DNA of 64,000 nucleotides from Macrostomum lignano (GCA_002269645.1 NIVC01003829.1:1-64000); one strand, 5' to 3'; shown: positions 12,273 through 64,000, counted from the stretch's first letter. A program made the numbers and translations. Notes: generated by a model not told the origin, from the letters alone.

Positions 12273-12789
12273 GTGCAGCCGAAGCGGCAGCTTTTATCGG
12301 ATCCTTGCAAAATAGAATATCTTTTCTGGCATCCCAAATCCCAAATGGCTTTCATAAACGCACAGTTCCCCGTTGGAAAGCCGAATACAAAGTGCGGCGT
12401 CAGCGTTAGCTGACTCGCATGTACGCACCTGAAATGATGAGAGTGAAGCGTCTGAAGTAAAAAATGATGCATTATCTTTTTAAATAATACCGAAACGAAA
12501 CAATCTTCTCAGTTTCGAACATAAATAGAGACAGTACACAGGGGTACAGTGGGAGATAGCCTGGAAGTGGTTGCCATGGAAGGGGTAGCCTGGGAGGAGT
12601 AGCCTGGAAGGGCTGCCTGGGAGGGGTAAAGTAAGAGGGGAGCCTGAGGGGTAAAGTAGGAGGGGAGCCTGAGGGGCTGTCTGGGAGGGATGCCTAGGAG
12701 GGGTACAATGGCAGGGGTAGCCTGGGAGGGGTAGCCTAGAGAGCGTAGCTGGGAGGGTAGAGTAGGAGGGTTAGCCTGGGAGGGGTTAG

Positions 12790-16265: not shown

Positions 16266-19083
16266 ATGACAGCCCGGTGCCTTCGACGAAAGAATCGACT
16301 GCTACTAGCAGCTCTGGCCGCCGTCTGTTGCACAGCTCTGCTGCTCCGGCCGCATCGTGAGAATCCGGTTGCACTGTCGGGGTTCGGGTGTTCGGGTGTT
16401 CGGGGTTCGGGGTTAGGTCGGGGTCGGGATTAGGGGTCCCGATGAATGTTCGGGACGGGATTTTGGACCGGGATTTCGGGGTTTTCGGGGTTTCGCAAAT
16501 TTTCTGAATTCCCATAGAACTACGAAAAAATCCTTATGAATTAGAATTAGCTTTTTTTCGTTTTTAACGTGATTGCTTAAGGCTTATGACGCTTAAATTC
16601 AAAGCTTTATTTAATGCTTTTCTGTGGTCGTAAGTTTCGTTAATAACATTTACACTTGCCGTGCCGTCCATAAACTGCGATGATTATCAAGTCAAAAAGA
16701 GTTTTCAAGCTTATTTAAACTCGTTAACTATTACTGTTGGCTAGCTTAAAAATGTTTTTTTAAACTTATGGTATATTATTTGTACTATTACAAATATTAT
16801 TTTTCTATAATTAAGTTTATATTTTTTAAGGTATTGTTTCTTAGGAAAAGATTTAGAATCTTAAGAATTTTAAGAATCATAGAAATGTTTGAATTTATAG
16901 ACCTATTCTTCAATAGAGGGTCATATTTAAGTTTAAGTTGAACTGAAACAGGCTAATAGTCGTAAGTAGCCGTCAATACCACTTTTTATTAAATGCTATT
17001 GCTTACTTCCGGGTTATCGGGGTTCGGGGTCGGGATTAGGGTTCGGGACGGGATTCGGGATTCCCGAAAGATGTCCGGGATCGGGGTTAACCCCGAACCC
17101 CGAAAAAAATGCCATCCCGAACACCCCTAGTTACAGCGCTGCCGACATCCGTAACGCCGCCGCCAATCAACCGCTCGGCGATCCCACCGCCCAGCTGCCG
17201 CGGCCTCCTGTCTGGCAACGCCAACGACATCCGTCGAGCGGAGGCTCGCTACGGACGGCCGGAAGACTTTCTGGATGACGGCCAGCTGGCGAGGCTGCCG
17301 TGCGACCGGCTCACTGCGGGCTACTGGACCGGGCCGGTCAGCCGTCTGGAGCTCGGCTTCCCCATTGCCTTCACCGTGATGGCGCATCACAGCTTCTATC
17401 AGGTAAAACGAATCAACTTAATCAGAAACAACAACAACAGCAACAACAACAACTACGACAAAATACACCTCGTGCCGACCACAAGTGGCCACAGAGGGGG
17501 TGTCAGACACTCAATAAGTAAACCAAAAACACTTATTAACGCTCTCAATTAGCTCTTAATGCTCGAATGCAATGAGGAATCCATCTGGAGGAGGTCAAGG
17601 GTGTAAAATAGCGCTTAAATCCCGCCTGCGGCGCTCTATAACTGGCGCTGAAAAGATTTGTTAAGCTGGAACTGGGATCTCGTGTAATTGACAACAATTA
17701 AATGAGCATTGTGTTGCATCCTGGTCAGCTAAGCGAACATATAAGAGGCTTTCTAGGAAAAACGGGCATTCAACTTTGAGAGCCTGTGATAAAATTTTCA
17801 ACCAATTAGTTTTGTTGACCAACTTTAATACTCGAATAATTGACAGTTTTGCATAAAAACAGACGCTGAGCAGAATTTTGCTTCCATAGCATGCGTCGGC
17901 GTGACTCAGGCGCTGTTCTTTTAACCCAACAGTCCAAGTCAAATGCAAGCTGCCATTGCTTCATTCTGCAGAGATCGTTGAACTGCATGACTGATTTTTT
18001 TAATTAGTTAGAACCTTGCCATGAAGTAGTGGCTTCGTGCCAAGGCGGAAAGAGGAAAAGGTGCCATAAATGAACAATACATAATCGTCATTATTGCACG
18101 ATCGCAGGTGAACAAGCTGATGCAGGCTGTGCACCGCTCCCACAATGCCTACTGTCTGCACGTCGACGCAAAATCCAGCGCCAATTTCTTGGCCGCCGCC
18201 AAGCGCCTGGCCGGTTGCCTTGGCAACGTGCTCACGGTCGAGTCGACAGTCGTCTGGGGTGAGACATCCGTGCTGCTGGCCGACCTCAAGTGCTTCCGTG
18301 CTCTGCTTAACGGACACAGAGTGAGTGAGCTATTGTACTTAACCCACTCACTGCATGAGCGTGCTGTGAGTCTGACTGTACTCGTATCGTACGTAACTTC
18401 CGCAGAAGTGGAACTACGTTATCAACCTGACTGGGCAGGAATACCCGATCCGCACCCTCATGGAGATGGTGCACATTCTCAAGCTGATGAACGGCAGCAA
18501 CAACATGGAGAAGCTGATCCCCTCCAACTACAGGCAGTACCCCGCGATGCCCAACGCTACGGGCTTGGGGGGCCTTCGCTGGTACAAGGGCTCAGCTCAC
18601 GCCATCATCAGCCGAGCTGCTGTCCAATACATCATGGAGGACCACAGAGCTCGCCAGATTCTGGACCACATCCAGCGGCACTATGCCAGAGGTCGCACCA
18701 TTCCAGACGAGACATACTACGCAACCCTCAACCACAACTACGGAATGCTGCAGTTCCCAGGCTCCTACACGGGCAACCGGGTGACAACTGCGACGGAGTA
18801 CCGGCAGATCTACCGCTACAAAATCTGGTCTGGAAGGTGCAGGGCCGGTCTCAGCGTTCGTGGCATCTGCATTCTGGGCGCTGCCGACCTGCAGGACTTC
18901 AACTCGAGACCGGAGCTTATCGCCAACAAGATGTACTTCGACTTCCAGAGCGATGCGTTCCGCTGCGTACAGGAGAGATTCTGGAATAACACGAGGGCCG
19001 ACTATGACTCCAATTTGACCAAGAGCTTCGTGGTACCGCTGAGTTTCTATGAGAAACTCGAGTTCGTGAGGCACCACGTGTAG
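16266..19083 (+). CDS. Core-2/I-branching beta-1,6-N-acetylglucosaminyltransferase (GT14/GCNT family), 4 exons: 16266-16356, 17137-17402, 18108-18320, 18406-19083 (415 aa)
   Basis: Exon 1 encodes a type II signal-anchor (MTARCLRRKNRLLLAALAAVCCTALLL). All introns are GT-AG and phase-consistent (1,0,0). Family motifs FPIAFTVMAH, YCLHVDAKS, KWNYVINLTGQEYPIR, KGSAH, PDETYYATLN, RGICILG, ANKM. An alternative acceptor at 17131 is possible. Confidence 0.9.
16374..17129 (-). mobile_element. hAT-like MITE in intron 1 with (CGGGTT/CGGGAT)n subterminal repeats and an AT-rich core
   Basis: G-rich repeats at 16374-16495 and 17008-17105; right end CCCGAACACCCCTA (minus strand TAGGGGTGTTCGGG). Left TIR and TSD not found. 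Confidence 0.5.
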
Positions 19084-19776
19084 CTTTACCGAGTTTGTGG
19101 GGCACCACGTGTAGCTTTACCGAGCTCGTGAGGCACCACGTGTAGCTTTACCGAGCTTGTGGGGCACCACGTGTAGCTTTACCGAGCTCGTGAGGCACCA
19201 CGTGTAGCTTTACCGAGCTCGTGAGGCACCACGTGTAGCTTTACCGAGCTCGTGAGGCACCATGTGTAGCTTTACCGAGCTCGTGAGGCACCACGTGTAG
19301 CTTTACAGAGCTCGTGAGGCACCACGTGTAGCTTTACCGAGCTCGTGAGGCACCACGTGTAGCTTTACCGAGCTCGTGAGGCACCACGTGTAGCTTTACC
19401 GAGCTCGTGAGGCACCACGTGTAGCTTTACCGAGCTCGTGAGGCACCATGTGTAGCTTTACCAAGCTCGTGAGGCACCACGTGTAGCTTTACCGAGCTCG
19501 TGGGGCACCACGTGTAGCTTTACCGAGCTCGTGGGGCACCACGTGTAGCTTTACCGAGCTCGTGAGGCACCACGTGTAGCTTTACCGAGCTCGAGCTTTA
19601 CCGAGCTCGTGAGGCACCACGTGTAGCTTTACAGAGCTCGTGAGGCACCACGTGTAGCTTTACAGAGTTTGTGGGGCACCACGTGTAGCTTTACCGAGCT
19701 CGTGAGGCACCACGTGTAGCTTTACAGAGTTTGTGGGGCACCACGTGTAGCTTTACCGAGCTCGTGAGGCACCACG
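19060..19776 (+). repeat. 31-bp tandem repeat (GAGCTCGTGAGGCACCACGTGTAGCTTTACC), ~23 copies, first copy overlapping the GCNT stop codon
   Basis: TAG at 19081 recurs at 19112 and onward with a 31-nt period. Confidence 0.95.
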
Positions 19777-21361
19777 AGTGATTAATGCCAGCTGTTTTGG
19801 ATGGCTCAGATAGTTTGCTTGTGTGAGTGTAGAAGTTGGCCTCTCACGACCGTAGTGGAGTGGACCGTAGTGGCTCCAATTATTGGAGCATATATGCATG
19901 CATACTGATTTAGTACATAGTGAGAACAGCGTGCTACTGTTGCGCAACAGTGCAAGGGCGAAAACGCGATGCCGGTTCACGTGGGAGAAGGCTAGGGCGA
20001 GAGGAAAGAGAGACCAGAGAGTGCAGTACATTTAGATTCTATGCTACGTCAGTGGCTCAGTGGTATTAGCTCAACGATGTTTTGCTTTATGAAGCTTCTT
20101 AAATTTTAAGTGTTAACGCAATTTTTTCTACCTTACTTGAACCTCCCCTGCAAGGCGCTTCCCTGGCACTGAGATAGAGGGCACTGCCCCCTCTGCCCCC
20201 TGTTCCGCTGCCCCTGTCTACTCGTATTTAGAACATAGCTGGTAATATACTGTATGCGAGCTACTTTCTATGCCCAGAACAGCACAAAATTTTACCGCAC
20301 AATTATTTACTGCGACTTTCGACTTTTAAGCTCCAGGTTTTGACCACCAAGCTTATTGAGTCATTTCTCTAGTTTAATTACGAGTATACACGAGTATTCG
20401 GTTTTCTGCTTTCAACATTTAGTGCTATAAAAATTGTCTTATGCGGATTCCTGATCCGTGATGCGAAATACATTCGAATCAATTAAAATACTCTTTTAAT
20501 GTATATGTTAAGTTATTTTAAATTCAAAACAAGCTGAAATATTCTAGAAAACTTGTACTACAGGTGCACCAATGCTTCTAGTTTTTCAAGAAACGAATTT
20601 TTCCGAATCTATGAAAAAAAATTCTGGAGCAATCGTGCCCTGCGTGGCGGGAAAACAGAGAGAGAGAGAGAGAAACTATGACACGGATGTGAACTTTGGA
20701 GATATGAAGTTTGAATATATGAAGTTTGGGGAAATTTAAGTTTGGGAATAGGGAATAATGAAGTCGGATGCCACTGGAGAATTTGCATCCAGTTTTATAG
20801 ATCTAGTGCTCCAGTTAGACTGCATGTATTCTAACTAGGAGCGTACAAGCTGTACCACTTTTCCATTTTATAGAAATTAACAGACATTTCCGTTAAGATT
20901 AATAATGGGACTTATTGACAAGCATCTTAAACAAGGATTAGCCGTTTTTTTATCACGCCCATGTAGCCTGAGATACAAGCATCAGATCGAGGTAGGTAAA
21001 CAGGCCTAATCTGTATTACTGAGCGACTCACACAGAACTCACGCCGACAGTAGAGTGCAAGAGAAGCGGTAGGCGGTCGGTAAGAGGGCCTAAGATGAAC
21101 TAACTCTTAACTCCCATGCCTCATCCCATCCTGAATTCCTCCTCTCGGTCGGTGTACTTTCCGCCCCCCCCCCAGCTCAGCCAAGCACAGACGAAAGGAT
21201 TTATCGATTTTTCCGTCTTCTAGCTTCATCTGCTCCCAGAACGTGTGCGAAGGTGCTTCTTGTTTGCGAAGGGTTGGGTGTGAGCTATGAACATCGCTAT
21301 CTAGATATCTGGACATACAAGAAACAGTCATTGTCGTTTTCACACGCGAGAGATTTTAACA

Positions 21362-29184: not shown

Positions 29185-34063
<4,879 letters not shown>

Positions 34064-48723: not shown

Positions 48724-49790
48724 TTTTTGGTACCCTTTCCTGGAAGGGGTTTCAAAAAAACAGGAGAAAAATCCTTTCCACAGAAATCTTTGTTGTTAAA
48801 ACGAGGTGCCGTAAAACTCGGCGCGGATCAGTTCCGAAGAACTCTGCCGCATTACATTTTTATTAAAAGGTGAATTTACAAGTGAATTCGATTCAGATAT
48901 TGAACGTATATTGTAGTAAAATTTTAATGAATCCGTAAAACTATTTTTAAATATTTGGCATTTTTCGTCGCCAAAAAAGAAGCGAGGCGAAAAATGCCTC
49001 ACAGAGAAGGGATCCGATAAAAAGAGGAAATCTAAAATATTGCGTGCTGGAATATTTTAAGTCCTGTTGAAGGTAAAAAGAGGCTATTGAGTAAAAGAAT
49101 GTTATGGCGTGTATTTATATTTAGCTATAATTGAATAGGTAGTATAGAGGGGTGTAAAGAGTATTTATCAAAGTTTATAAAAAGAAGTTAGATAAAAACA
49201 GTTGGAATCCGGTCTCCAGGCTCGGTGTAGAAGTTCACCAACACGGAGTTGAACTTCGGGACATCGAACTGGGTATCATGGTAAATGAAGTCACGAATGT
49301 CTTCAATTACCGGATGCCAGTTTAGATTTTCCTTCAGCTCAACCCCGCTGTAGGTGTACGACGGGCCGATCCAGTAGACGCGGCGCTGCTCACTCGGACG
49401 ATGCTGAAAGGCTTGAGGCAGCAGGTCGGTGATCAGGCGCTCGTAGACTTGGTCCGCGACCTCGCTCAGGAACTTGGGCGCGTAGATTATCGCACTGTCG
49501 CTGGCGTAGATCGTCTGAGCTTTAAGAGCTTTAAGGGTCAGCACCCAGGAGTCCACACAAAGTGCGCTCACTGACGACTTAAAATAAAATCATGGGGGGT
49601 GGGGCGGCCTAGAGATAAGCAATTTACAAGTGGAATAAACAGAGTCAGCTATGTAGTTTAAGATAAACTAATATTGACTTTCGTAAAACACAAAATCGGT
49701 AAAATCATGAGGTAACACTCATGACGTAATCTTGACGTAAATCGAAGTAAACACACCGGAAACACTCTGCTCAGTTAATCACTGACTTCA
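48724..49790 (-). mobile_element. Internally deleted copy (copy 1) of the AlkB-LINE: 5' UTR + AlkB N-half + 3' UTR
   Basis: 49204-49514 differs at only 5 positions from 55035-55345; 48730-49200 is a diverged homolog of 62670-63190; junction microhomology GGAA at 49204-49207. Confidence 0.85.
49188..49577 (-). pseudogene. Truncated AlkB N-terminal half (stops before the HxD motif)
   Basis: ...IYAPKFLSEVADQVYERL...RRVYWIGPSYTYSG...FNSVLVNFYTEPGDRIP, then runs into 3' UTR sequence. Confidence 0.85.
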
Positions 49791-50268
49791 AGTATCTTGA
49801 TTTTCACAAATCAGGGATTCTCGGAAATCTTTGTTACGCGAATTGATATTAATATGATCGAATATATACAATTTCACTATTTAAAAGCAGTATTTATGCA
49901 CGCATTTGGGGATAAAAAAGAGGGGAGGGAAATCCCGCACAAAGAAGGGATCTAATAAAAGCAGGACATCTAAAAAATACGTGCTTGATATTTGAAGGCC
50001 TATTGAGAGTAAAAGCAAGACATTTAAGTAAAAAAATAGAGATTAAAAATGCAATAGCGCATATTTGAATTTAGTTGTAAAAATAGAATGAATATAGTAA
50101 AGGTGTAAAAAAGCAATTAGTGATATTTGTAGAGCAGTTGGGTAAAAAACACAGTTGGGAAAATTGTAAAAAGAAACGCGAGGAGACATAGAGATTACCT
50201 AATCAGTCCTAATGACTGATCAACCGATCTCTGTCTCAGGCAGCAAGTTTAGTTTTATTAGTTGCGTT

Positions 50269-53090
50269 TCAGAGCGTGGTCACTTCCGGTTTGGGAGGCT
50301 GGTGCCCGGCCTTACCCTGGGGTGGGATTCCCCTGTTTCTTTCCCGACGCCTCATGGCATCCCAGAGGACATTGAGGACTGGGGTTCGGCCCGGAGCCCG
50401 AGGGGCTTCCGGCTCAATGTGGAAGCTGTGGAGCTTGGCTGCCCTCATCTTGAGCAGCCAAGCCACCCCAGCTGCTTGACCCTGTCTGCGAGCATCGGCA
50501 TACCTGCCAGCTTGTGCAGGTATTCGATGCTGATGTAGGATGGCACACCATAGCAGATACGGAGAGCCAGGTTTTGGATTTTCTGCAATTTGATTTGGTT
50601 AGTCGCACAAATTTGGCTCAGGATTGGCGCTCCGTAGGTGAGAGCGCTTTCTCCGTATGCCCTGTACAGCATTCTGAGGGTGGTGCTACTCAGCTTAGTC
50701 ATTTTTGCAATTCTGCACAGTGACATTACAATGGCTCTGCTGGTATCTGCCATGTTGTCCACATGTTTGTTCAGGCAGAGGCTCTGGTCAAGGAGGACAC
50801 CCAGGAATTTCACCTCCTGACAGTACGGAACCTCAGTGTCCCCCAGATACAGTTTGGGTCGCAAGTCCATGCGCCTAGTGGGTTTGTAGTTGAAAGCGAT
50901 TGCTTTGCTTTTACCGGCATTCAGTCTAATGCCTTGTTTACCGCACCAGTCAAAGACTCGTCTGAGGTAGCTTTGAAGGGATGTTCGGAGCCCCGCAAAG
51001 GTGTCTGCTGAGGCCCAGACGGCCATGTCGTCTGCGAATTGACTGCGTTTGACGCTTGAGATGGTGGGAGTCGGCATTGAGCTGACGAAGAGGAGATACA
51101 GGAGAGGACTCAGAATGCCTCCCTGAGGGACGCCAGCCTGGATGGTGTGGGGATCGCTTAGGGCCCCCTCGATTCGAACCTGGATCTGTCTGTCTCGCAG
51201 GTAGTCAGACAGGATTCGCATGAGCATAGGTGGAAAACCATCGGTGAGCATGCTATGCCTGATCTTGTCGTGCCAGGTGGAGTCAAAAGCTGCCTCTGCA
51301 TCCAGGAAGACTGCAGCGGACTTTTTAGCTTTGCACTTTGCTACCATGACATCTTGTGCCAGACGGCACAGGTTGTCATACGTGGAGTGAATTTTGCGGT
51401 AGGCGCATTGGTCATCTCCTAGGGTCTTATTATCCTCAAGGTGCTTGGTGAGTCTTTTTGCTATAAGCTTCTCAAACACTTTGCCCAGACATGAGGTCAG
51501 GCTGATTGGTCTGTAGGAGTTGGGGTGTTCGGGCGGTTTGTCCGGCTTGGGGATCATTGTCACCACAGCTTTCTTCCAGGCGCTGGGGAAAATCCCTCGA
51601 CCGTAGCAGGCGTTGAAGAGGTTAGTGAGTCTCGTGATTGCCACCCCCTCTAAGCCCAGCTTGAGGACGCAGTTGGGAATCTTGTCCAGCCCGGGTGCTC
51701 CATCAGGCCTGAGGTGCTCCAGTTCCCACACTGTGTCTGCCACAGAGAATGCAGCATCAAGTGGGTGGGTCTCAATGGGTTCGATTCCCTCAGGAACGGG
51801 GTAGAATGAGGTGAGCTGTGCCACATCGGCCACCTCACGTTTGAGCTGTTCGCATGTGGAAGGGACTGGGCGCATCTTTGAGTCCAGAGTCTCGGCTAGA
51901 AGGTTAGCCTTCTCCAGATCTGTGTGCGCAGTTGTTTGACCCAGGGTGAGGCTGGGGATCGAGGTTGGCTTAAATTTGCCCATCAGCTTTTTAGTGTCAT
52001 GCCAGAAATTCTTCACTTTCTTGTTCTTGCTGTTTTCAACAATACTCTCACAGACTTTGGTTAGCTTTCCATTCTGGAAGGAGTTAATTTCTCTCTTTAT
52101 GCGATTTGCGAGCTGGTTTGCTTGGGTTTTGAAATTTTGATCCCGTGTGCTGAAGAAGAGGCGTCTGAGTCGTCTGCGCTCTTTGATCAGGTCGAGGATG
52201 TACTTGGGTAGGGCGTTTTTGGCACCACAGTCTGGTACTGTGGAGTCAATCACGGTGTGAATGGCCTTTGTGATGTGATCCACTTCGGCATTGATTTGGT
52301 CAGCATTTGATAATTTAATATTCTGATCTGAGCTCAAAGCTTCACTGATTTTGAGTCTGAACTCGTCCCAGTTTGTTTTTGAGAAGTTTTTGGGTCTGGG
52401 GGGACCAGCCCATTTCTTCGACTGAATATTGAGCGTGAGGATTATGGGTAAGTGGTCACTGCCCAGGTCAGGACCCACCTCAAAGTCCTGCACAAATGGG
52501 AGAAAGTCCTCAGTGGCCAGGGCGAGGTCCAAGACATTCCTAGAAATCAGCCCGTTTTTGGTGGCCAGTCTGGTGAACTGACCGGCTTGATTGAGAATGG
52601 TTGGCGAGGTGGGGCCCTCAGACAGCCAGTCGTGCAGCTGGTAGCCAGCCATGTTGTTGCTGCTGTCACCCCCGAGGAAGCGGTGTCTGGCATTGAGGTC
52701 ACCCATGAGCACACTGCGCCTACGGGAGAGAAGATTTTTGAGTAGGTTCAGGTTCAGATGATACGGTGCTGGAGACCTGTACACCAGAGCAAGAATGAAG
52801 TCAGGACCAGAGTTGTCAGACAAGCTCACGGTGCAAGAGATGGCTTCATGGTTGACATTGTCATACTGCAAGCGCACACTTGTGAGTTTGACGCGAGGAG
52901 AGTGGGCAAGGAGAAGCCCGCGTTTGACTTGCGGGGTATCATACCGAATGATGGAGTACCCGGGAATCTGGACAGTGTGACAACTTTTGAGAATGGTCTC
53001 AGAGAAGAGGGCAATGTCTAGCTCCTGACTGACGACCCACTGTGTCAGCTCTCTGATTTTCGGGTTGAATCCCCTGCAGTTTAAATGCAT
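50269..53090 (-). CDS. LINE ORF2: AP endonuclease + reverse transcriptase; 1-nt frameshift near 50466-50469 relative to copy 3
   Basis: APE LKIMHLNCRGF, ALFSET, MGDLNARH, LDLAL, GSDHLP; [38 protein letters not shown]. Copy 3 reads through the same point (LGVAWLLKM), so the exact C-terminus is uncertain. Confidence 0.92.
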
Positions 53091-53176: not shown

Positions 53177-55345
53177 CTAGGACTCAGTGGTCATGCCAGC
53201 CATGCCCGGCACTTCCTGGAGTGCAGCCCGCACAATGTCCTCAACCATTTTACTGGTTGATTCCACAGTGAGGACCTCCCCAGGCGGTCGGGACAGGGCC
53301 TGCACAACCACTTGAGTCAGAGAGCGGGTGATCAGGGGCAACAGCATGCTCACCACCGACATAAAGTCACTAAGCTGCAGCTGCACCGCCTGGCCGGCAT
53401 CAGCTGACGGAGCAGTCGCATTGACATCAGACTCGGTCTCTGCCGCCGGAGCGCTCCTGGCATCATCGGTCACGATGACAAGCGGCCGGATCGCGGCGGG
53501 TACCGGCACCGTGCGCCTGCCTCGGCGGATCAGCCAGCCGCTGTCGGAGTCGTCGTCGGCGGCGGCGTCGTCGGTCTCACTTGACACTGGGGCAGCAGCG
53601 GCCGCAGCTTCCGCAGCTCGCGCCGCGGCTTTGGCCTCAGCAGCCGCTCTGGTCGCCTTGTCGTGCTCCGCCTTGGCGACGGTGCAGGCTCGACTGGTGG
53701 TTCGGTGCGAGCCGCCGCAGTTGGCGCAGACCGCTGGGCCCTCGTGCTGGCACTCCTTCCAGGAATGCTGGCCGCCGCAAATCCGGCAGCGCTGCTGCCC
53801 CCGACACTGAGCAGCGCGGTGGCCGAACTCCTGGCAGCGCTGGCATTGCAGAGCGCGGACCGGCTCGTCTGTGCGGCTGTCCTCGCAGTTGAACTTCAAG
53901 AAGTCGGTGCAGATGCCATCGCGGAGGCACTTCTCGTAGGTCATCGCCGACTTTGTGAAGATGCGCACGAACTGGGTTGCCTTTCCAGTCGCTCTGGCTC
54001 GGATTCTGTGGACGCTGACAATGTCCAGCTTGAGCGTGCCGCGCAACAGGGTCGCGAAGTCAGCCTCCGAGAATGCGAGGGGCACCTCAGTAGCGACGAA
54101 GGTGCGTACCGGCTGCTGCTGCACTCTGTCGGGCCCTGTTCTGTTGTCCAGCGGTCGGGCTCGGGCTGGACGGCGCTTTACGGGATGCTCGAGCAGCTTC
54201 TCCTCGCGCAGCGCGCCGCCCAGGAAGACGTTGTAGTCCCGCTCCGACGCTGGGAACACGAGATAGGCCGGCTGATTCGCCATCGGCGCAGTGTTGACGG
54301 CTCTAGCTTCGCCGGCAAAGTTGGTCTGCAGCCAGGCAACGAACTGCATCAGCTTGTTGGCCGCGTCCCGGTGCACCTCAAAAACGATCGGCGGGATGGC
54401 AGCCTGGGGCCTTCTGGGCGGCGCAGGGCGCGCCGCAACCTGCGCGTAGGGCCGCGCTGCCGCAGCCGCCTGCGCGCTTGTCGCCGAAGCCGCCGCCGCA
54501 CCGGCCGGCCATGAAGCCGCCGAAGCCGCCGCCGCACCGGACGCCGCGCCGCGACCTCCTCGCCTGCCTCGCTGGTGGCCGCCACGGCCGCGCCGACCCC
54601 GATCGCTTTCGCGGTCTCGCGTCGCCGTCGCCTGCCGCTCCTGGGGCCTGTCGTCGCCCCGGCCGCCCTGGTCGTCGTCGTGGCCGCCTTGGTCGTCGTC
54701 CCGACCGCCTTGGTCGTCGCCGAATGGGCCGCCGTTGAGCGGCTGGCTGTAGGTCGGATCATCCGGCAGAGCTCGCTTGCGCCGCAGCTCCGGCTTGGTG
54801 ACACGGAATGTTAGCGAGATGCGGACGCCATTCTGAGAGTGGGCGGCGGGCACCTGGTGCTGCAGGCGTTTCTGGCAGTTTCCTGCCATCAGAATCAGCG
54901 AGCCTGGCAGCGTTGGAAAGCGGTGCGTCACGTTGCCGTCCCGACGGCGCAGCATGAACAGCCGCTCAGCGCCGAAGGACACGGTCGCGATCGTCGGCCT
55001 GTCGCCGAGCTCATCCTCATCGTCCGAGTGCCAGGGAATCCGGTCTCCCGGCTCGGTGTAGAAGTTCACCAACACGGAGTTGAACTTCGGGACATCGAAC
55101 TGGGTATCATGGTAAATGAAGTCACGAATGTCTTCAATTACCTGATGCCAGTTTAGATTTTCCTTCAGCTCAACCCCGCTGTAGGTGTACGACGGGCCGA
55201 TCCAGTAGACGCGGCGCTGCTCACTCGGACGATGCTGAAAGGCTTGAGGCAGCAGGTCGGTGATCAGACGCTCGTAGACTTGGTCCGCGACCTCGCTCAG
55301 AAACTTGGGCGCGTAGATTATCGTACTGTCGCTGGCGTAGATCGT
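53177..55345 (-). CDS. LINE ORF1 fusion: AlkB 2OG-Fe(II) dioxygenase + RGG/Ala-rich linker + gag-like CCHC domain (722 open codons, no in-frame ATG before the AlkB domain)
   Basis: The frame of the listed ORF 53177-55075 stays open up to the TAG at 55348-55346. AlkB motifs YTYSG, FNSVLVNFY, WHSDDE (HxD), GSLILM, QHQVP (H), RISLTFR (RxxxxxR); knuckles CQRCQEFGHRAAQC, CRICGGQHSWKEC, CANCGGSHRTTSRAC. Confidence 0.92.
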   Translation of the reverse strand, partial: TIYASDSTIIYAPKFLSEVADQVYERLITDLLPQAFQHRPSEQRRVYWIGPSYTYSGVELKENLNWHQVIEDIRDFIYHDTQFDVPKFNSVLVNFYTEPGDRIPWHSDDEDELGDRPTIATVSFGAERLFMLRRRDGNVTHRFPTLPGSLILMAGNCQKRLQHQVPAAHSQNGVRISLTFRVTKPELRRKRALPDDPTYSQPLNGGPFGDDQGGRDDDQGGHDDDQGGRGDDRPQERQATATRDRESDRGRRGRGGHQRGRRGGRGAASGAAAASAASWPAGAAAASATSAQAAAAARPYAQVAARPAPPRRPQAAIPPIVFEVHRDAANKLMQFVAWLQTNFAGEARAVNTAPMANQPAYLVFPASERDYNVFLGGALREEKLLEHPVKRRPARARPLDNRTGPDRVQQQPVRTFVATEVPLAFSEADFATLLRGTLKLDIVSVHRIRARATGKATQFVRIFTKSAMTYEKCLRDGICTDFLKFNCEDSRTDEPVRALQCQRCQEFGHRAAQCRGQQRCRICGGQHSWKECQHEGPAVCANCGGSHRTTSRACTVAKAEHDKATRAAAEAKAAARAAEAAAAAAPVSSETDDAAADDDSDSGWLIRRGRRTVPVPAAIRPLVIVTDDARSAPAAETESDVNATAPSADAGQAVQLQLSDFMSVVSMLLPLITRSLTQVVVQALSRPPGEVLTVESTSKMVEDIVRAALQEVPGMAGMTTES

Positions 55346-56849
55346 CTAAGGGTTGGGGCGACTACAAGATAAAATCTTGGGGGATGGGGCGGCCTGGGGA
55401 GAGATAAGCAATGTACAGTGGAATAAACAGAGTTAGCTATGAAGTTTAAGATAGAACCAACATTAGAAATTATAAATTGCTCTCTCTAGAGCGTTATGGA
55501 CATTCATTCAGGCATACAAACCTTAGAGATTTAGTATATTTAGATTTAAGATAGAACCAACATTAGAAATTATAAATTGCTCTCTCTAGAGCGTTATGGA
55601 CATTCATTCAGGCATACAAACCTTAGAACTTTAGTATATTTAGACTAGAGCGTTATGGACATTCAAGCAAGCAAGCATACAAACCTTAGAGATTTAGTAT
55701 ATTTAGATTTAAGATAGAACCAACATTAGAAATTATAAATTGCTCTCTCTAGAGCGTTATGGACATTCATTCGGCATACAAACCTTAGAGATTTAGTATA
55801 TTTAGATTTAGAAGACTAGCTAATTAGAGCTGGCTGCCAGCAGCCAGAATAATTTTTTTATTGCCCCCCTTTAAGTGGAGCGGAGTGAGTTTTCTTATCA
55901 GTTGGCTCTGGCGCAATCAATTAAAATCGGCAGTGGTTTCTGGCTGATAAAATTTGCATTGAAAAAGGCCATTTAAAACAGTTTTTCGATCCCTTTAATC
56001 CCTTTAATCCCTATTTAATCCCTTTAGCATTGAAGCAGATACAAGAAATTTTAACTGTCTTCTTTCCAGACAATTTTGAATCTTTTGGCGAAAACGCGAT
56101 CAAAATCGGTGAAGAATTGCTCTCTCTAGAGCGTTATGGACATTCATTCAAGCAAGCATACAAACAAACCTTAGAGATTTAGTATATTTAGATTAGAAGA
56201 TTTTAACTGTCTTCTTTCCAGACAATTTTGAATCTTTTGGCGAAAACGCGATGAAAATCGGTGAAGAATTGCAGTCTCTAGAGCGTTATGGACAAGCAAG
56301 CATACAAATATTAGAGATTTAGTATATTTAGACTAGCCATTTAGCCCCCCGCTGGGGAGCCCTAAAATGACACCAATTGGTTTTTATTTTGACGCAAGAG
56401 TAACCTTACTATAATTATCCAAAATGTTGATTTCCATTAATCAAAAATTACCTTTTCTCATTTTGGCAAAAATAAATTGCCATGAATCAGAACTTTCATC
56501 AGCCAAAAAAGGTTCCTTCATCAGCCCAAAACCCTTTCTCAATCAGCAAATAGTGCTTATCCTTTCAAGCACAAACTCTTAGTGCATATCGTCGCTGGCC
56601 GGGGCATATTCTTATCCGCAGCAAATATGCAAATCACTGACGGCCTTAGACCCTCTCTTTTAATTAGCCTAAATCAAAGAATGAAACCTTTAATAAATGC
56701 GCTGGTATTTCCTATTAGCAGAAATCAGCATCACTTGTGTGTACTATTTCAATATCTGAACTACATGAGCTACTTCAGCCGTACTACCTGACTATCTGAC
56801 AATCGCCCAACAACCTAACACCCCTAACAATTCAGCCATCATCCATGAG

Positions 56850-59175: not shown

Positions 59176-62100
59176 ACTGTTCCGCAAAATCTGGGAGCAG
59201 ATGGCTACTGATCTCCATATGCTTCTCAATAATCGAAACCATTTGAAATGTTTGCAACTTGCAGTTTAAAATTGATTTGCAATTCTCTTGCATATTTATT
59301 AATTCATTGTACGTCAGATTAGCACTGCTCACCCAGATTAGACCCTTTGCAAATTAGTATTTACAGCAGATTAGCACTGCTCTAGAAGACTAACGCAGCC
59401 CCAGCAAAAGTATCTTTAAATTTAAGTGTTTACCATCTCCATGAATCTGCATAGGATGCAATCATTATTGTCACAGGTCACAAAGATAAATTCGCTGCTT
59501 CAATGCAGGCTCGAACTGCTGACATCAAAGCATTCTGTTTGCTTCTGCTTGATACTGCCTGCCTACTGCGGCTATTGTGCCTATTGACATGTGGTCGAAA
59601 TAATCTAGTTTAGCAACTTCAGCCGTTTGAAGTTAACCCCCGGAAATCGGCATTTATCCCCACAACAACCTGAAATTATCCCTTCATCTAATCCCGCAAA
59701 AAGACTGCAGTTATTTCTTAGCAGCCAGCATTTATCATCCACTTTGCATTTTAAAACTTTTATTAAAATTAAGAATGCATACCCTCAGCGGCATAGAATT
59801 GTCCCCTTAGCCAAAAATATTTCACTTAGCAGCCGCAGAAATCCCCTAAACAACTTGTACTTAATCTTCCACAGTAAATATCCACTCAAAACTCAATACT
59901 TAGTTATAAGCCTCAGAAGTCTGCCATTATCCTCTAATTAGTCCGCAGTTTTCCCTCTCAGCAGTCTGCAGCTATACGCTCATACGTCTGGAGGAACTAC
60001 CTCAGCAGTTTGCAGTTGTTTCCCCTTTGCAATCTGCAATGATCCCTTCGACAGTCTGCAGTTCCCCTCAGCAGTCTGCAGTCATTTCATTTTCAGTCTA
60101 CAACTGTACCATTAACGATTTTCATTCATTCTCTCAGCAGCCTGCAGTTCTCCTCTCGGCCGGCTCCTCCTCTTTGCAGTCTCCTCTGCAAACTGCAATT
60201 TGCTCAGAATTGTACGGCTCACTAATCAATTTTCGATACATATCGGCAGTCTTGAAAAGCTCAGCATTTAGCAGCATTGTCTGCAGTTTAGTAATTTCGT
60301 ACTTTTATGGAGCTAGACAATACCCATTGATGGGATCAGTTATACTCAAAGCAGTTTTTACAAATCAAATTTGATTAGTGGCTTGTGCCGAGTAGCAAAA
60401 AATGAATTGCTAATTAATAAAAAAATGTTTCAATTGAAATTAAATAAAAAATGTTTCAATTAGTCCAGGCACAAGCTATAAATTATTGAATTATTTGAAT
60501 TTTTATTATCCGCCGGGGAGGCAGACTCGAACCTTGGACCTTACGTCTAGCCTAAACCTAGTCCTAGTGCCTACACTGCGGCTACTCCGCCTATTGATGG
60601 GAGGACAACAAAATCAGCCATATATGCTTCAGAACTGCAGTTAAATACATAGCAGTGATAGGCTGCTCAGTGTGTAGGCGTGCAGGCGGAGCCAATGCAC
60701 AGTTGATTGAGTGAAATCTATAAATAGCAATTTTCTATGGAGTCCGCCAGTCAGAGCCAGGGTCAGAATGTACACACGCAGCCACTGAGCATTTTTTCTC
60801 CTTGCACACTGCAACCAGTATTGAAGCTTACACAGTGGAGAGAGAAAAGTTATAGCGCAATCATAATTGGAATTGGAATTCAGCCAGTCCAGTCAAGAAT
60901 TCAACCTAGTTTGCCCTACCATTAAAAGCATTGGGAAAACTCGTTTTTCGAATATTTAATACCTTTAGCATTAAAGCCGATTAAAGAAATTTCAACTGTC
61001 TTCTTTCCAGATAATTACAAATCTTTTCGTAAAAACGCGATTAAAATTGGTCAATGGTTCTATCTCTAGAACGTTACACGAATACTAACACAAATTCTCT
61101 TCCAGTGAAAGTCACACGAAGCAGCTATGACATAATCAAATACAAATCAGAATTCAGTCAGTCGGTTTTTTCTCTAGCATTCTTACAGCGCATTTCAAGT
61201 CGAAAGAGCTGCTTGACCTTTGCAAAAAAGCATGTTTTTCGAATATTTAATCCCTTTAGCATTGAAGCAGATTAAAGAAATTTTAACCGTCTTCTTTCCA
61301 GACAATTTTAAATCTTTTGGCGAAAACGCGATCAAAATCGGTGAAGAATTGCCATCTCTAGAGCGTTATGGACATACAAACCTTAGAGATTTAGTATATT
61401 TATACAAGCATACAAATATTAGAGATTTAGTATATGTAGATAGAATAGAATAGATAGAAGATAGATTAGAATAGATAGAAGATAGAAGACTAGAGCGTTA
61501 TGGACAAGCAAGCAAGCAAGCATACAAATATTAGAGATTTAGTATATTTAGACTAGCTAATTAGAGCTGGCTGCCAGCAGCCAGAATAATTTTTTTATTG
61601 CCCCCCTTTAAGTGAGGCCCAGTGAGTTTTCTTATCAGTTGGCTCTGGCGCAATCAATTAAAATTGGCAGTGAAGTTTTTCGCTGATAAAATTTGCATTG
61701 AAAAAGGCCATTTAAAACAGTTTTTCGAATATTTAATCCCTTTAGCATTGGAGCAGATTAAAGAAATTTTAACCGTCTTCTTTCCAGACAATTTTGAATC
61801 TTTTGGCGAAAACACGATCAAAATCGGTGAAGAATTGCAATCTCTAGAGCGTTATGGACATTCAAGCAAGCAAGCATACAAACCTTAGAGATTTAGTATA
61901 TTTAAATTAGATTAGAAGATAGAAGATAGAAGATTAGAAGATAGATAGATAGAAGATATACTAGCTAATTAGAGCTGGCTGCCAGCATCCAGAATAATTT
62001 TTATTGCCCCCCTTTAAGTGGAGCGGAGTGAGTTTTCTTATCAGTTGGCTCTGGCGCAATCAATTAAAATTGGCAGTGAAGTTTCTGGCTGATAAAATTT

Positions 62101-62664
62101 GCATTGAAAAAGGCCATTTAAAACAGTTTTTCGAATATTTAATCCCTTTAGCATTGAAGCAGAGTAAAGAAATTTTAACTGTCTTCTTTCCAGACAATTT
62201 TGAATCTTTTGGCGAAAACACGATCAAAATCGGTGAAGAATTGCAATCTCTAGAGCGTTATGGACATTCAAGCAAGCAAGCATACAAACCTTAGAGATTC
62301 ATTCATTCAAGCATACAAACCTTAGAGATTTAGTATATTTAGATTGCAATCTCTAGAGCGTTATGGACATACAAACCTTAGAGATTTAGTATATTTGGAT
62401 TAGAAGATTAGATAGATAGAAGAATTAGAAGATTGAAAAAAATCGGTTCAGGCATTCAGGCTGTAGACTGGAATACCGGTCAAACCTTAGAGATTTAGTA
62501 TATTGTGATTTAGATTTAGAAGATTAGAAGATTAGAAGAGATTTAGTATATTTAGAAGTACCTTTTCTTGGAAGTAATTCCTTTCGAATCGAAGTAATCT
62601 CACCATGGAAATTATTGTTAAAATGAGGTACACTGCTGCGTTAGAGTAATTACTTTTGACTTCA

Positions 62665-64000
62665 TTAGTACCCCTTCTTGGAAGGGGTTTCACAAATCAG
62701 GGAACACTCATTGAATGTTCCTCTCCACGGAAATCTTTGTTGTTAAAACGAGGTGCCGTCGAAACCGGCGCGGGTCAGTTCCGAAGAACTCTGCTGCAGT
62801 TATATTTTGTATTTGATCGAAAGAATTAAAAATATTTACAAGATTTCGATTTGAATATTTATACGAATATTGAAATTAAAAATATACATATATAAAACTA
62901 TTTTTCAATATTTTGCAGTATTTTGCACGCATTTGGGGATAAAAAAGAGGGGAGGGAAATCCCGCACAAAGAAGGGATCTAATAAAAGCAGGACATCTAA
63001 AAAATACGTGCTTGATATTTGAAGGCCTATTGAGAGTAAAAGCAAGACATTTAAGTAAAAAAATAGAGATTAAGAATGCAATAGCGCATATTTGAATTTA
63101 GTTGTAAAAATAGAATGAATATAGTAAAGGTGTAAAAAAGCAATTAGTGATATTTGTAGAGCAGTTGGGTAAAAAACACAGTTGGGAAAATTGTAAAAAG
63201 AAACGCGAGGAGACATAGAGATTACCTAATCAGTCCTAATGACTGATCAACCGATCTCTGTCTCAGGCAGCAAGTTTAGTTTTATTAGTTGCGTTTCAGA
63301 GCGTGGTCACTTCCGGTTTGGGAGGCTGGTGCCCGGCCTTACCCTGGGTGGGATTCCCCTGTTTCTTTCCCGACGCCTCATGGCATCCCAGAGGACATTG
63401 AGGACTGGGGTTCGGCCCGGAGCCCGAGGGGCTTCCGGCTCAATGTGGAAGCTGTGGAGCTTGGCTGCCCTCATCTTGAGCAGCCAAGCCACCCCCAGCT
63501 GCTTGACCCTGTCTGCGAGCATCGGCATACCTGCCAGCTTGTGCAGGTATTCGATGCTGATGTAGGATGGCACACCATAGCAGATACGGAGAGCCAGGTT
63601 TTGGATTTTCTGCAATTTGATTTGGTTAGTCGCACAAATTTGGCTCAGGATTGGCGCTCCGTAGGTGAGAGCGCTTTCTCCGTATGCCCTGTACAGCATT
63701 CTGAGGGTGGTGCTACTCAGCTTAGTCATTTTTGCAATTCTGCACAGTGACATTACAATGGCTCTGCTGGTATCTGCCATGTTGTCCACATGTTTGTTCA
63801 GGCAGAGGCTCTGGTCAAGGAGGACACCCAGGAATTTCACCTCCTGACAGTACGGAACCTCAGTGTCCCCCAGATACAGTTTGGGTCGCAAGTCCATGCG
63901 CCTAGTGGGTTTGTAGTTGAAAGCGATTGCTTTGCTTTTACCGGCATTCAGTCTAATGCCTTGTTTACCGCACCAGTCAAAGACTCGTCTGAGGTAGCTT
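62665..64000 (-). mobile_element. 3' part of a third AlkB-LINE family copy (RT C-terminus + 3' UTR), continuing beyond the window
   Basis: 62925-64000 is nearly identical to ~49905-50980; ORF 63307-63897 equals the C-terminus of ORF2; terminal hairpin at 62670-62688. The AlkB part of this copy is outside the window. Confidence 0.92.

What the first reader, a model, noticed from the sequence alone, without database searches (positions are those of the whole stretch)
53177..55345. LINE ORF1 fused to a complete AlkB RNA/ssDNA demethylase domain
Seen: one open frame joins a full AlkB fold (YTYSG lid, N-x-Y, HxD...H iron triad, RxxxxxR 2OG-binding motif, all intact) to an RGG/Ala linker and a Jockey-type IPPIV + three-CCHC gag domain, directly upstream of APE-RT. 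Established: ALKBH2/3-type enzymes remove m1A/m3C, these lesions block reverse transcriptases, and plant RNA viruses (flexiviruses, closteroviruses) carry AlkB in their replicases to repair RNA. ORF1 proteins coat LINE RNA. Inference: this element packages its own eraser in the RNP to repair or unmark its template RNA or cDNA, possibly countering host methylation. I know of no functional description of such a Jockey ORF1, but related architectures may already sit in repeat databases.
Basis: partly seen in the sequence, partly recalled or inferred. Interest (0 to 1): 0.92.

Follow-up and report, generated by a model that had tools for sequence, protein, structure and literature searches.

The report
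Flatworm LINE with AlkB demethylase ORF1
A jumping gene (LINE retrotransposon) of the flatworm Macrostomum lignano has an intact ALKBH3-like nucleic-acid demethylase built into the RNA-coating protein it makes, a combination conserved across a whole lineage of such elements and apparently not yet described, although the particular copy in this window has lost its start codon.

Summary
On the minus strand, 55345-53177 is one 722-codon open frame: AlkB dioxygenase, RGG/Ala-rich linker, two RRM-like domains, three CCHC knuckles. An APE+RT ORF2 starts 86 nt downstream.

- **AlkB domain.** It passes Pfam (E=1.6e-21). It is closest to human ALKBH3 (E=4e-24; model TM 0.84). All iron and 2-oxoglutarate ligands are present.
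- **Host.** Macrostomum lignano.
- **Not a one-off chimera.** Three more copies in an M. lignano contig, other M. lignano families and unidentified sequencing runs show the same architecture at 27-39% protein identity. Their ORF2s form a clade with 100% bootstrap support; the nearest AlkB-less relatives have plain 374-402-aa ORF1s.
- **Selection.** The AlkB part evolves as slowly as the RNA-binding part and much more slowly than the linker.
- **Caveats.** This copy lacks the ATG and a 178-codon N-terminal extension found in sister copies, and has a frameshift near the ORF2 end, so it is probably defective. "Jockey" clade membership is untested. Demethylation of the element's own RNA or cDNA (m1A/m3C type) is inferred, not shown.
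- **Literature.** I found no description of a LINE ORF1-AlkB fusion; the nearest precedent is an orchid Ty3/Gypsy AlkB.

Verdict: a new variant of a known kind, of fairly high interest.

The parts
55349..55464 (-). Remnant 5' UTR of copy A. It is homologous to the 5' UTR of copy B (49575-49675, 85%) and, over 55349-55424, to the 5' UTR of the L001 copies (75%). It ends in ...CCCTTAG directly before the open frame.
54776..55345 (-). AlkB (Fe(II)/2-oxoglutarate dioxygenase) domain, ORF1 residues 1-190. All catalytic residues are present. There is no start codon upstream.
   Evidence: Pfam PF13532 E=1.6e-21; ALKBH3 E=4.4e-24; AF2 pLDDT 93.7, TM 0.84 to ALKBH3; motif positions
54389..54775 (-). 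Low-complexity linker, ORF1 residues 191-319: D/G/Q repeats, an RGG box, an Ala-rich tract, then ..AIPPIV.
   Evidence: translation; fast-evolving in homologues (dN 0.65-0.70)
54167..54388 (-). First RRM-like domain (beta-alpha-beta-beta-alpha-beta), ORF1 residues 320-393
   Evidence: AF2 model pLDDT ~88; Foldseek hits to tandem-RRM proteins, E~1e-6
53879..54106 (-). Second RRM-like domain, ORF1 residues 414-489
53684..53845 (-). Three CCHC zinc knuckles (CX2CX4HX4C, CX2CX3HX4C, CX2CX3HX6C), ORF1 residues 501-554
   Evidence: Cys/His columns invariant in the family alignment
53177..53683 (-). ORF1 C-terminal region (Ala-rich stretch, then a conserved helical tail) and the stop codon
50445..53090 (-). 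ORF2, 881 aa: APE endonuclease (about 52440-53090) and reverse transcriptase (about 50796-51554); no RNase H. A 1-bp deletion near 50470 truncates the C-terminal ~45 codons.
   Evidence: Pfam; indel comparison with L001 copies 1-3 and window copy C
49887..50444 (-). 3' UTR of copy A, cut off at 49887. In copy C and the L001 copies the UTR continues for about another 250 nt.
48772..49675 (-). Copy B, an internally deleted element lying head-to-tail after copy A. It comprises a 5' UTR (49575-49675), the first 103 AlkB codons (49204-49516, 98.4% identical to copy A), and then a divergent 3' UTR. It has the same ATG-less junction ...AG|ACGATCTAC.
62659..64000 (-). Copy C: 3' end of ORF2 plus the full 3' UTR of the same family (99.6% identical to copy A). 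It runs off the end of the window.

Best explanation
The locus is a recently derived but 5'-deleted copy of a Macrostomum lignano non-LTR (APE-type) retrotransposon family.

The family's ORF1 protein has this order: variable N-terminus, ALKBH3-like AlkB dioxygenase, RGG/Ala linker, two RRMs, three CCHC knuckles, C-terminal helical tail. ORF2 is APE plus RT.

The AlkB module was acquired once, at the base of a distinct RT lineage. It has been kept catalytically intact under purifying selection while that lineage diversified.

Inferred mechanism:
- ORF1p coats the element's own RNA, so the tethered dioxygenase is concentrated on the LINE RNP and at the site of target-primed reverse transcription.
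- There it oxidatively removes N1-methyladenine / N3-methylcytosine-type methyl groups, the ALKBH3 substrate class, from single-stranded template RNA and/or nascent cDNA.
- These lesions disrupt base pairing and stall polymerases, so removing them raises the yield of full-length copies.

Shown here: the architecture, its recurrence, the clade structure, the intact active site and the selection. Inferred: enzymatic activity, substrate, and action in cis on the element's own nucleic acids.

The window copy itself probably cannot make the fusion protein by ordinary initiation.
For: - **Domains:**
- **Host identity:** (P0001, BOX15_Mlig027759g8, 100% identity).
- **Recurrence within M. lignano:** three head-to-tail copies in NIVC01002892.1, 99.2% identical, each with AlkB-gag-APE-RT. 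Further M. lignano families are P0040, P0041/P0185, P0042 and P0044.
- **Recurrence outside M. lignano:**
  - Full-length homologues P0036-P0039 (757-962 aa, 27-30% identity over the full-length alignment) occur in runs SRR31628392 to SRR31628437.
  - L002 is a 9-kb contig with AlkB-ORF1 followed by APE-RT.
  - L012 (SRR24204725) has AlkB + Ala linker + gag + 3 CCHC upstream of an ORF2 57% identical to the window's.
- **Single RT lineage:** AlkB-associated ORF2s are 38-60% identical to the window ORF2 and form a clade with 100% NJ bootstrap. The nearest AlkB-less relatives (<=31%) have ordinary 374-402-aa ORF1s with the same three knuckles.
- **Active site:** N-x-Y, HxD, H and RxxxxxR are invariant in every member that covers them.
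- **Selection, deep comparisons:** AlkB dN is 0.25 and 0.31, gag 0.28 and 0.32, linker 0.70 and 0.65. AlkB dN/dS is about 0.10 with saturated dS.
- **Selection, shallow comparisons:** window copy A against the L001 copies shows 6 synonymous and 0-1 nonsynonymous changes in AlkB, and 11-14 against 2-3 in ORF2.
- **Substrate class:** Foldseek gives ALKBH3 TM 0.84 (33-34% identity), ahead of ALKBH2 (by E-value and identity, equal TM) and well ahead of E. coli AlkB 0.72, ALKBH5 0.61-0.66 and FTO 0.65.
- **Precedents for replicon-encoded AlkB:** orchid Ty3/Gypsy (PMC9289625) and RNA-virus polyproteins in BFVD.
Against: - No biochemical or expression data exist for any member.
- The copy in the window has no initiation codon for the AlkB frame and a truncated ORF2 tail. 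All three L001 copies carry 1-bp indels in ORF1, possibly PacBio assembly errors. So no demonstrably fully intact genomic copy was seen in M. lignano. The intact full-length ORF1s come from Logan contigs of unidentified organisms.
- dS is saturated in the deep comparisons, so dN/dS values are rough.
- The AlkB NJ tree supports monophyly of the LINE AlkBs only weakly (53%) and does not resolve the donor.
- The substrate is inferred only from fold similarity. ALKBH3-like enzymes also act on tRNA. The orchid element's AlkB was shown to remove m6A (PMC9289625).
Confidence: 0.6

Rival explanations
1. One-off chimera: a single LINE copy captured a host ALKBH exon, and the AlkB part is a neutral passenger.
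For: M. lignano has host-like ALKBH3-type genes of similar identity: P0053/P0307 at 41% and P0064 at 38%. The window copy lacks a start codon.
Against: The fusion occurs in at least five copies in two M. lignano loci. It also occurs in several diverged M. lignano families and in other samples at 27-39% identity, always with a related ORF2. Catalytic residues are invariant and dN in AlkB is no higher than in gag.
Confidence: 0.02
2. m6A eraser: the AlkB removes regulatory N6-methyladenosine from the LINE transcript, or from host RNAs. This would evade m6A-dependent decay or silencing, as proposed for the orchid Ty3/Gypsy AlkB.
For: A retrotransposon-encoded AlkB with in vitro m6A demethylase activity exists (PMC9289625). 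m6A affects LINE-1 and ERV RNA in mammals, as summarised in PMC9289625.
Against: The domain is structurally and by sequence an ALKBH3/2-type enzyme (TM 0.84). It is far from the dedicated m6A erasers ALKBH5 and FTO (TM 0.61-0.66, 14-17% identity).
Confidence: 0.12
3. DNA-directed role. The enzyme acts on DNA rather than RNA. One possibility is that it removes 3mC/1mA from the single-stranded target flap or first-strand cDNA. Another is that it repairs 3mC made as an off-target product of host DNMTs on methylated transposon DNA.
For: ALKBH3 and ALKBH2 repair 3mC in DNA, and DNMTs introduce 3mC. M. lignano retains DNMT1, DNMT3 and ALKB2 (PMC9246332). The top structural matches are ALKBH3-ssDNA complexes.
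Against: Nothing distinguishes ssDNA from RNA substrates at the sequence level. ORF1p's RRM/CCHC modules are RNA-binding and chaperone modules (PMC4120745). The host already has ALKB2.
Confidence: 0.15
4. Non-catalytic or other-substrate role: the AlkB fold serves as an extra nucleic-acid-binding or oligomerisation module, or it modifies a protein or tRNA.
For: Some AlkB homologues act on tRNA or proteins (general knowledge of ALKBH1, 4, 7 and 8). The orchid H448A mutant kept RNA binding (PMC9289625).
Against: Strict conservation of all metal and 2OG ligands across about 60-70% sequence divergence argues for catalysis.
Confidence: 0.06
5. About this copy only: the ATG-less copies A and B are still expressed. 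Spliced-leader trans-splicing at the AG directly before the frame would add the M. lignano SL, which ends in ...TTGCATG, and so supply an in-frame AUG (M-T-I-Y-A-S-D...).
For: Both copies keep AG immediately before ACGATCTAC although their upstream sequences differ by a 46-nt indel. The SL is CGGTCTCTTACTGCGAAGACTCAATTTATTGCATG, and about 30% of M. lignano genes are trans-spliced (PMC8629364). Neither copy has an in-frame ATG upstream.
Against: Neither junction fits the enriched acceptor motif [T/C]TNCAG (PMC8629364). The N-terminal extension carrying the ATG is present in the L001 copies, and ATG-started N-terminal regions of different length precede AlkB in P0036-P0039, so a simple deletion is more parsimonious. 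Copy A also has an ORF2 frameshift and copy B is internally deleted. No SL-joined sequence could be searched.
Confidence: 0.15

Closest known systems
Jockey-lineage / type IB LINE ORF1 (two RRMs upstream of three CCHC knuckles; Khazina & Weichenrieder classes as used in PMC4120745)
   Same: - ORF1 has two RRM-like domains followed by three knuckles with spacing CX2CX4HX4C / CX2CX3HX4C / CX2CX3HX6C.
- ORF2 has APE + RT and no RNase H.
- The two ORFs are separate and lie close together.
   Different: - An about 190-aa AlkB dioxygenase and an about 130-aa low-complexity linker precede the RRMs.
- The survey of 448 full-length Jockey-superfamily elements lists PHD, esterase, Tnp22, RRM and CCHC, with no dioxygenase (PMC4120745; 0 occurrences of 'dioxygenase').
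- The host is a flatworm, whereas the Jockey clade proper is reported only from arthropods.
- Clade assignment by RT phylogeny was not done.
Orchid (Phalaenopsis) Ty3/Gypsy elements with an AlkB/2-ODD domain (PMC9289625)
   Same: A retrotransposon lineage that fixed an AlkB-family dioxygenase. The proposed role is epitranscriptomic protection of its own RNA.
   Different: - The orchid element is an LTR element of 25 kb.
- Its AlkB sits at the C-terminus of a separate extra ORF, not fused to the RNA-packaging protein.
- It is described as ALKBH5-like with m6A activity, and the acquisition is recent and in plants.
- Here the element is a non-LTR element, the AlkB is fused N-terminally to ORF1p, it is ALKBH3-like, and the AlkB-bearing lineage is deeply diverged.
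AlkB domains in replicase polyproteins of plant RNA viruses (Flexiviridae-type viruses, Closteroviridae) and in invertebrate RNA-virus polyproteins
   Same: An AlkB fold embedded in a protein of an RNA-templated replicon. Foldseek matches reach TM 0.64-0.79. The logic is the same: keep the template free of m1A/m3C.
   Different: - In viruses the domain lies in the replicase, not in a coat or chaperone protein.
- Sequence identity is only 18-27%.
- The LINE domain is closer to cellular ALKBH3.
- The repair activity of viral AlkBs is from my own knowledge and was not checked here.
Human ALKBH3 (PDB 2iuw, 8jnk, 8jnr, 9ncz)
   Same: Best sequence and structure match: E=4.4e-24, 33-34% identity, TM 0.84. 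The metal and 2OG ligands are identical, and the YTYS lid motif is shared.
   Different: ALKBH3 is a stand-alone host repair enzyme. The LINE family has a shorter segment between the first helix and the ..RK.W.GP strand. Orthology is not established: the tree is unresolved among host ALKBH3-like, metazoan ALKBH3 and bacterial AlkB.
Other enzymatic or chromatin modules captured by LINEs (esterase and PHD in CR1/L2 ORF1; viral helicase in TRAS ORF2)
   Same: The modular gain of an accessory domain by a LINE protein, retained through diversification (PMC4120745, PMC5563155).
   Different: The captured module here is a nucleic-acid demethylase.

Membership tests
AlkB family of Fe(II)/2-oxoglutarate dioxygenases (Pfam PF13532) | Profile match above the curated threshold | tested here: met
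   77.9 bits against a 31.2 cut-off, E=1.6e-21. Homologues score 101-109 bits.
AlkB family of Fe(II)/2-oxoglutarate dioxygenases (Pfam PF13532) | HxD...H iron triad and the 2OG-binding N-x-Y and R-x5-R residues | tested here: met
   H106, D108, H163, N94, Y96, R175 and R181 are aligned with ALKBH3 and invariant in the family.
AlkB family of Fe(II)/2-oxoglutarate dioxygenases (Pfam PF13532) | Double-stranded beta-helix fold with a nucleotide-recognition lid | tested here: met
   AF2 model pLDDT 93.7, pTM 0.90. TM 0.84 to ALKBH3 and ALKBH2, 0.72 to E. coli AlkB. This is a prediction, not a solved structure.
AlkB family of Fe(II)/2-oxoglutarate dioxygenases (Pfam PF13532) | Oxidative demethylase activity | not testable with these tools
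   Needs an enzyme assay.
ALKBH3 subfamily (ssDNA/RNA m1A/m3C demethylases) | Groups with ALKBH3 orthologues in a phylogeny | tested here: inconclusive
   ALKBH3 is the best PDB hit by sequence and fold. The NJ tree does not resolve the sister group: host ALKBH3-like, metazoan ALKBH3 and bacterial AlkB are all 36-41% identical, with supports of 4-24%.
APE-type non-LTR retrotransposon (LINE) | ORF2 with an N-terminal apurinic-like endonuclease and a reverse transcriptase | tested here: met
   Exo_endo_phos_2 E=2.2e-11; RVT_1 E=1.5e-36.
APE-type non-LTR retrotransposon (LINE) | Multiple dispersed or tandem near-identical copies | tested here: met
   Copies A, B and C in the window, and three copies in L001 at 98.4-99.6% identity.
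APE-type non-LTR retrotransposon (LINE) | Defined 3' end (poly(A) or simple repeat) and target-site duplications | not tested
   Copies lie head-to-tail or against satellites, so element ends and TSDs could not be defined.
Type I (IB) ORF1p | At least one RRM immediately upstream of CCHC knuckles (PMC4120745) | tested here: met
   Two beta-alpha-beta-beta-alpha-beta domains (pLDDT ~88) match tandem-RRM structures at E~1e-6. Three knuckles follow. The fold is predicted only.
Jockey clade sensu stricto | RT groups with Jockey-clade reference elements (RTclass1-type phylogeny) | not tested
   No reference LINE set was available. The only named relatives are weak ones: an Araneus 'transposon X-element' protein (32% identity over 42% of the query) and a pseudoscorpion protein. 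The Jockey clade is reported as arthropod-restricted (PMC4120745).
Jockey clade sensu stricto | No RNase H domain and no Cys-His motif after the RT | tested here: met
   Pfam finds only APE and RT. The C-terminal tail in the L001 copies and window copy C has no Cys motif. This feature is necessary but not sufficient.

The most novel reading that the evidence does not exclude
A monophyletic lineage of LINEs carries its own ALKBH3-like nucleic-acid demethylase inside the RNP as a counter-measure to methylation damage or host methyl-marking of retroelement RNA/cDNA. The same AlkB module has also moved into other retroelement classes in these animals: an AlkB ORF lies next to an RT + GIY-YIG, Penelope-like ORF in L015. 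This would make nucleic-acid demethylation a recurrent retroelement strategy across LTR, non-LTR and Penelope-like elements and RNA viruses. As an add-on, ATG-less copies such as the one in this window may borrow their start codon from the trans-spliced leader.
Probability: 0.3. Interest if true: 0.85.

Novelty: new variant of a known kind. Interest (0 to 1): 0.68.

Why it matters
ORF1 proteins of LINEs are seen as RNA-binding chaperones. The accessory modules known so far are esterase, PHD and coiled coils.

A conserved, selected ALKBH3-type dioxygenase fused to ORF1p would be the first nucleic-acid-modifying enzyme reported in a LINE packaging protein. I say this on the basis of my literature searches, which found no such report.

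It implies that base methylation of the RNA template or cDNA (m1A/m3C damage or deliberate marks) limits retrotransposition enough to select for a built-in eraser. This parallels the AlkB domains of plant RNA viruses and of an orchid LTR element.

It also offers a tractable system. M. lignano is a transgenic model, so one can test whether RNA or ssDNA methylation restricts LINEs. The family is also a source of compact RNA-tethered demethylases.

Tried and rejected
- **Plus-strand reading of the coordinates:** full of stops. The feature is on the minus strand.
- **Word-indexed homology search with the whole 722-aa frame:** it returned only one protein, probably because low-complexity words swamped the candidate list. 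With AlkB alone it returned only stand-alone AlkB proteins, mostly bacterial or unnamed plus plant ALKBH2, and missed the M. lignano paralogues. The exhaustive HMMER search was needed to find the family.
- **A start codon:** none in frame upstream in copy A or copy B. A short cis-intron reading of the upstream region gives no usable ATG (my inspection).
- **The SL sequence itself:** not present in the window or in any fetched locus. This was expected for a trans-spliced leader and tests nothing.
- **Organism of runs SRR31628392 and others, SRR24204725, SRR28338156, SRR19430222 and assembly ERZ27299524:** accession search in the paper library found nothing. The Macrostomum genome paper uses a different BioProject.
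- **Exact look-up of the window's ORF2 product:** not on record, so the window's own public record was not identified.
- **Donor of the AlkB domain:** the NJ tree is unresolved.
- **Structure prediction with a row from a locus translation:** It was repeated without that row.
- **Literature on AlkB or a dioxygenase in non-LTR ORF1:** five differently worded searches found only the orchid LTR case. A sixth search found the ORF1-diversity surveys, and those contain no occurrence of 'dioxygenase'.
Full report
**1. What is in the sequence**

The coordinates describe a frame on the minus strand. The plus strand is full of stops. Window 55345->53177 reads 722 codons without a stop, with a TAG directly upstream.

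- Pfam places 2OG-FeII_Oxy_2 (PF13532) on residues 43-181 (E=1.6e-21).
- The best solved relative is human ALKBH3 (E=4.4e-24), followed by ALKBH2 (about 2e-15).
- An AlphaFold model built on a 25-sequence alignment is confident (pLDDT 93.7, pTM 0.90).
- The model superposes on ALKBH3 and ALKBH2 at TM 0.84. It fits E. coli AlkB (0.72), ALKBH5 (0.61-0.66) and FTO (0.65) much less well.
- The domain is complete at its N-terminus. The first 41 residues form the first strands and helix of the model.

Downstream lie a D/G/Q-rich, RGG and Ala-rich linker, then IPPIV (residue 317), then three knuckles at 501, 520 and 540.

A model of residues 295-579 shows two beta-alpha-beta-beta-alpha-beta domains (pLDDT about 88). 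They match tandem-RRM proteins in the PDB (E about 1e-6). So the 'gag' part is two RRMs plus three CCHC, type IB in the scheme of PMC4120745.

ORF2 starts 86 nt after the ORF1 stop. It has APE and RT domains and no RNase H.

**2. Whose genome, and is the fusion recurrent**

The frame is 100% identical over 51% of its length to a partial Macrostomum lignano protein.

That protein's contig (NIVC01002892.1; locus L001) holds three head-to-tail copies. They are 99.2% identical to the window copy, with a period of 6453 bp. Each has AlkB-linker-gag followed by APE-RT.

The window itself holds three copies:
- Copy A, the finding.
- Copy B, an internally deleted copy directly downstream (49675->48772). 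It keeps the first 103 AlkB codons.
- Copy C, the 3' part of another copy (64000->62659).

An exhaustive HMMER search of 1.84 billion representatives found full-length homologues with the same order of modules:
- P0036 (757 aa), P0037 (843 aa), P0038 (962 aa) and P0039 (892 aa), at 27-30% identity over the full-length alignment (32-38% over the matched stretches).
- Further M. lignano families: P0040, P0041/P0185, P0042, P0044.

Loci for these show AlkB-ORF1 followed by APE-RT on a 9-kb contig (L002) and on shorter contigs from seven sequencing runs. A further run has a relative whose ORF2 is 57% identical to the window's, preceded by AlkB + Ala linker + gag + three knuckles (L012). I could not identify the organisms behind these runs.

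**3. One lineage, one acquisition**

ORF2s that follow an AlkB-ORF1 are 38-57% identical to the window ORF2. Two more, at 47% and 60%, sit on contigs that lack the 5' part of ORF1.

The next relatives are at most 31% identical. Where the contig shows it, they have ordinary 374-402-aa ORF1s with the same three-knuckle pattern and no AlkB.

In an NJ tree the AlkB-associated ORF2s form a clade with 100% bootstrap. The AlkB domains of these elements also cluster, but weakly (53%). Their sister group is unresolved: M. lignano ALKBH3-like genes, metazoan ALKBH3 and bacterial AlkB are all 36-41% identical. The donor therefore remains open.

**4. Selection**

| Comparison | AlkB | gag | linker | ORF2 |
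|---|---|---|---|---|
| P0036 vs P0038, dN | 0.25 | 0.28 | 0.70 | - |
| P0037 vs P0039, dN | 0.31 | 0.32 | 0.65 | - |
| Window copy A vs L001 copies, synonymous: nonsynonymous | 6: 0-1 | - | - | 11-14: 2-3 |

- In the deep pairs dS is saturated. The one computable AlkB dN/dS is about 0.10.
- Under neutrality roughly three quarters of changes would be nonsynonymous (my estimate). The shallow comparison is therefore far from neutral.
- Every member that covers the positions keeps N-x-Y, HxD, H and R-x5-R.

**5. The state of this particular copy**

- Copy A has no ATG before M131, which lies after the HxD motif.
- Copy B has none either.
- In L001 the ORF1 begins MAANRASAKK... and runs 178 codons before ...DLTDCQQ|TIYASD.
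- Homology between the window copies and L001 begins exactly at AG|ACGATCTAC.
- The extension is absent from the whole window.
- P0036-P0039 also start with an ATG and carry N-terminal regions of different length before AlkB. The window copies are therefore most simply deletion derivatives.
- Copy A also lacks one G in a G-run near 50470. Four other copies have that G. The loss truncates ORF2 by about 45 codons.
- Copy A's 3' UTR is cut at 49887.

One alternative is worth testing. The M. lignano spliced leader ends in ATG (PMC8629364). Both ATG-less copies keep an AG immediately before the frame, so trans-splicing there would give an in-frame AUG. The junctions do not fit the enriched acceptor motif, and I could not search transcript data. 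I rate this reading at 0.15.

**6. Mechanism**

Shown: the domain architecture, an intact active site, recurrence, a monophyletic RT lineage, and purifying selection.

Inferred: ORF1p binds the element's RNA through its RRMs and knuckles (roles summarised in PMC4120745). The fused ALKBH3-like enzyme would therefore work at high local concentration on single-stranded LINE RNA, and perhaps on cDNA or the target flap. It would remove m1A/m3C-type methyl groups that block reverse transcription.

The fold comparison favours this substrate class over m6A.

Three rivals remain open and are scored separately: an m6A eraser like the orchid element (PMC9289625), a DNA-directed role linked to DNMT-made 3mC (M. 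lignano keeps DNMT1/3 and ALKB2; PMC9246332), and a non-catalytic role.

**7. Comparison with what is known**

- **LINE ORF1 surveys.** They list RRM, CCHC, coiled coil/Tnp22, PHD and esterase. The 448-element Jockey-superfamily survey contains no dioxygenase (PMC4120745).
- **Only retrotransposon AlkB found.** It is in orchid Ty3/Gypsy elements. There it is a separate ORF, ALKBH5-like, with m6A activity (PMC9289625).
- **Viruses.** AlkB domains in RNA-virus polyproteins are structural relatives at TM 0.64-0.79.
- **Literature.** Five differently worded searches found no LINE-AlkB report. UniProt merely labels the M. lignano proteins 'Fe2OG dioxygenase domain-containing'. Repbase and Dfam could not be searched, so an unremarked database entry cannot be excluded.
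- **'Jockey'.** The label is justified only for the ORF1 type and the RNase-H-less ORF2. Clade membership is untested, and the Jockey clade proper is reported as arthropod-only (PMC4120745).

**8. Verdict**

The structure and the evolutionary tests hold, the function is still inference, and this copy is probably defective.
- Novelty: a new variant of a known kind, a LINE with an ORF1p-tethered ALKBH3-like demethylase.
- Interest: 0.68.

Noticed in passing
window 21361-47999: A 26.6-kb satellite of a 30-bp unit (AACACACACAAACTCACTGACTACAAGGTA, about 884 copies). It is interrupted by a different LINE. The AlkB-LINE copy B abuts its right-hand end at about 48000.
   Followed up: partly
window 29185-33925 (minus strand): A second, unrelated LINE inserted in the satellite. 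It has a 307-aa ORF1 (33002-33925), a 190-aa ORF with no Pfam match that may be an N-terminal endonuclease remnant (32430-33002), and a 1003-aa RT + RNase H ORF (29185-32196; RVT_1 E=1.6e-30, RNase_H E=4.9e-13). It carries no AlkB.
   Followed up: partly
window 3500-5700 and 11300-13900: A large inverted repeat. Arms 4860-5570 and 12047-12757 are 100% complementary over 711 nt. Each arm contains arrays of a 60-bp unit and a 20-21-bp unit. About 5.7-6.5 kb lies between the arms. The nature of this structure is unknown.
   Followed up: no
window 18108-19083: A host gene fragment: two overlapping frames both match the Core-2/I-branching enzyme family (PF02485, E=4e-9 and 6e-10). The split suggests an intron or a frameshift. 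A 31-bp tandem array follows directly at 19059-19776.
   Followed up: partly
window 55445-56337 and 60950-62412: Arrays of 100/163-bp and related units (…TCTAAATATACTAAATCTCTAAGGTTTGTATGC…) lie upstream of copy A and downstream of copy C. They overlap the start of the element's 5' UTR. It is unclear whether they are part of the element or a preferred target.
   Followed up: partly
L001 (NIVC01002892.1:86081-107289) 3353-21209: Three AlkB-LINE copies lie in a strict head-to-tail array (period 6453 bp), with the 3' UTR running straight into the next 5' UTR. Each copy carries its own private 1-bp indels in ORF1 or ORF2, possibly long-read assembly errors.
   Followed up: partly
L015 (SRR19430222) 2120-7398: A 1012-aa ORF with an AlkB domain (PF13532, E=5e-31) and no gag part lies directly upstream of a 618-aa ORF. 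That ORF has weak RVT_1 and GIY-YIG matches, both below Pfam thresholds, which is a Penelope-like layout. Its AlkB clusters with the LINE AlkBs. This suggests the module has moved between retroelement classes.
   Followed up: partly
L002 1-30 and L004 16-45: Two different AlkB-LINE families from the same runs (AT-rich P0037 and GC-rich P0038) share a nearly identical 30-nt sequence at or near the 5' ends of their contigs (AAAACACCTTTTTTT(T)GCAATTTTGACTC). It could be a common 5' terminus, a promoter or a specific target site.
   Followed up: no
proteins P0053/P0307 and P0064 (M. lignano): M. lignano also encodes ALKBH3-like proteins outside LINEs. One has a long S/R/P-rich N-terminus (490 aa). 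A cluster member of the other (469 aa) is annotated as C2H2-type. They are 41% and 38% identical to the LINE AlkB and are candidate donors or paralogues.
   Followed up: partly
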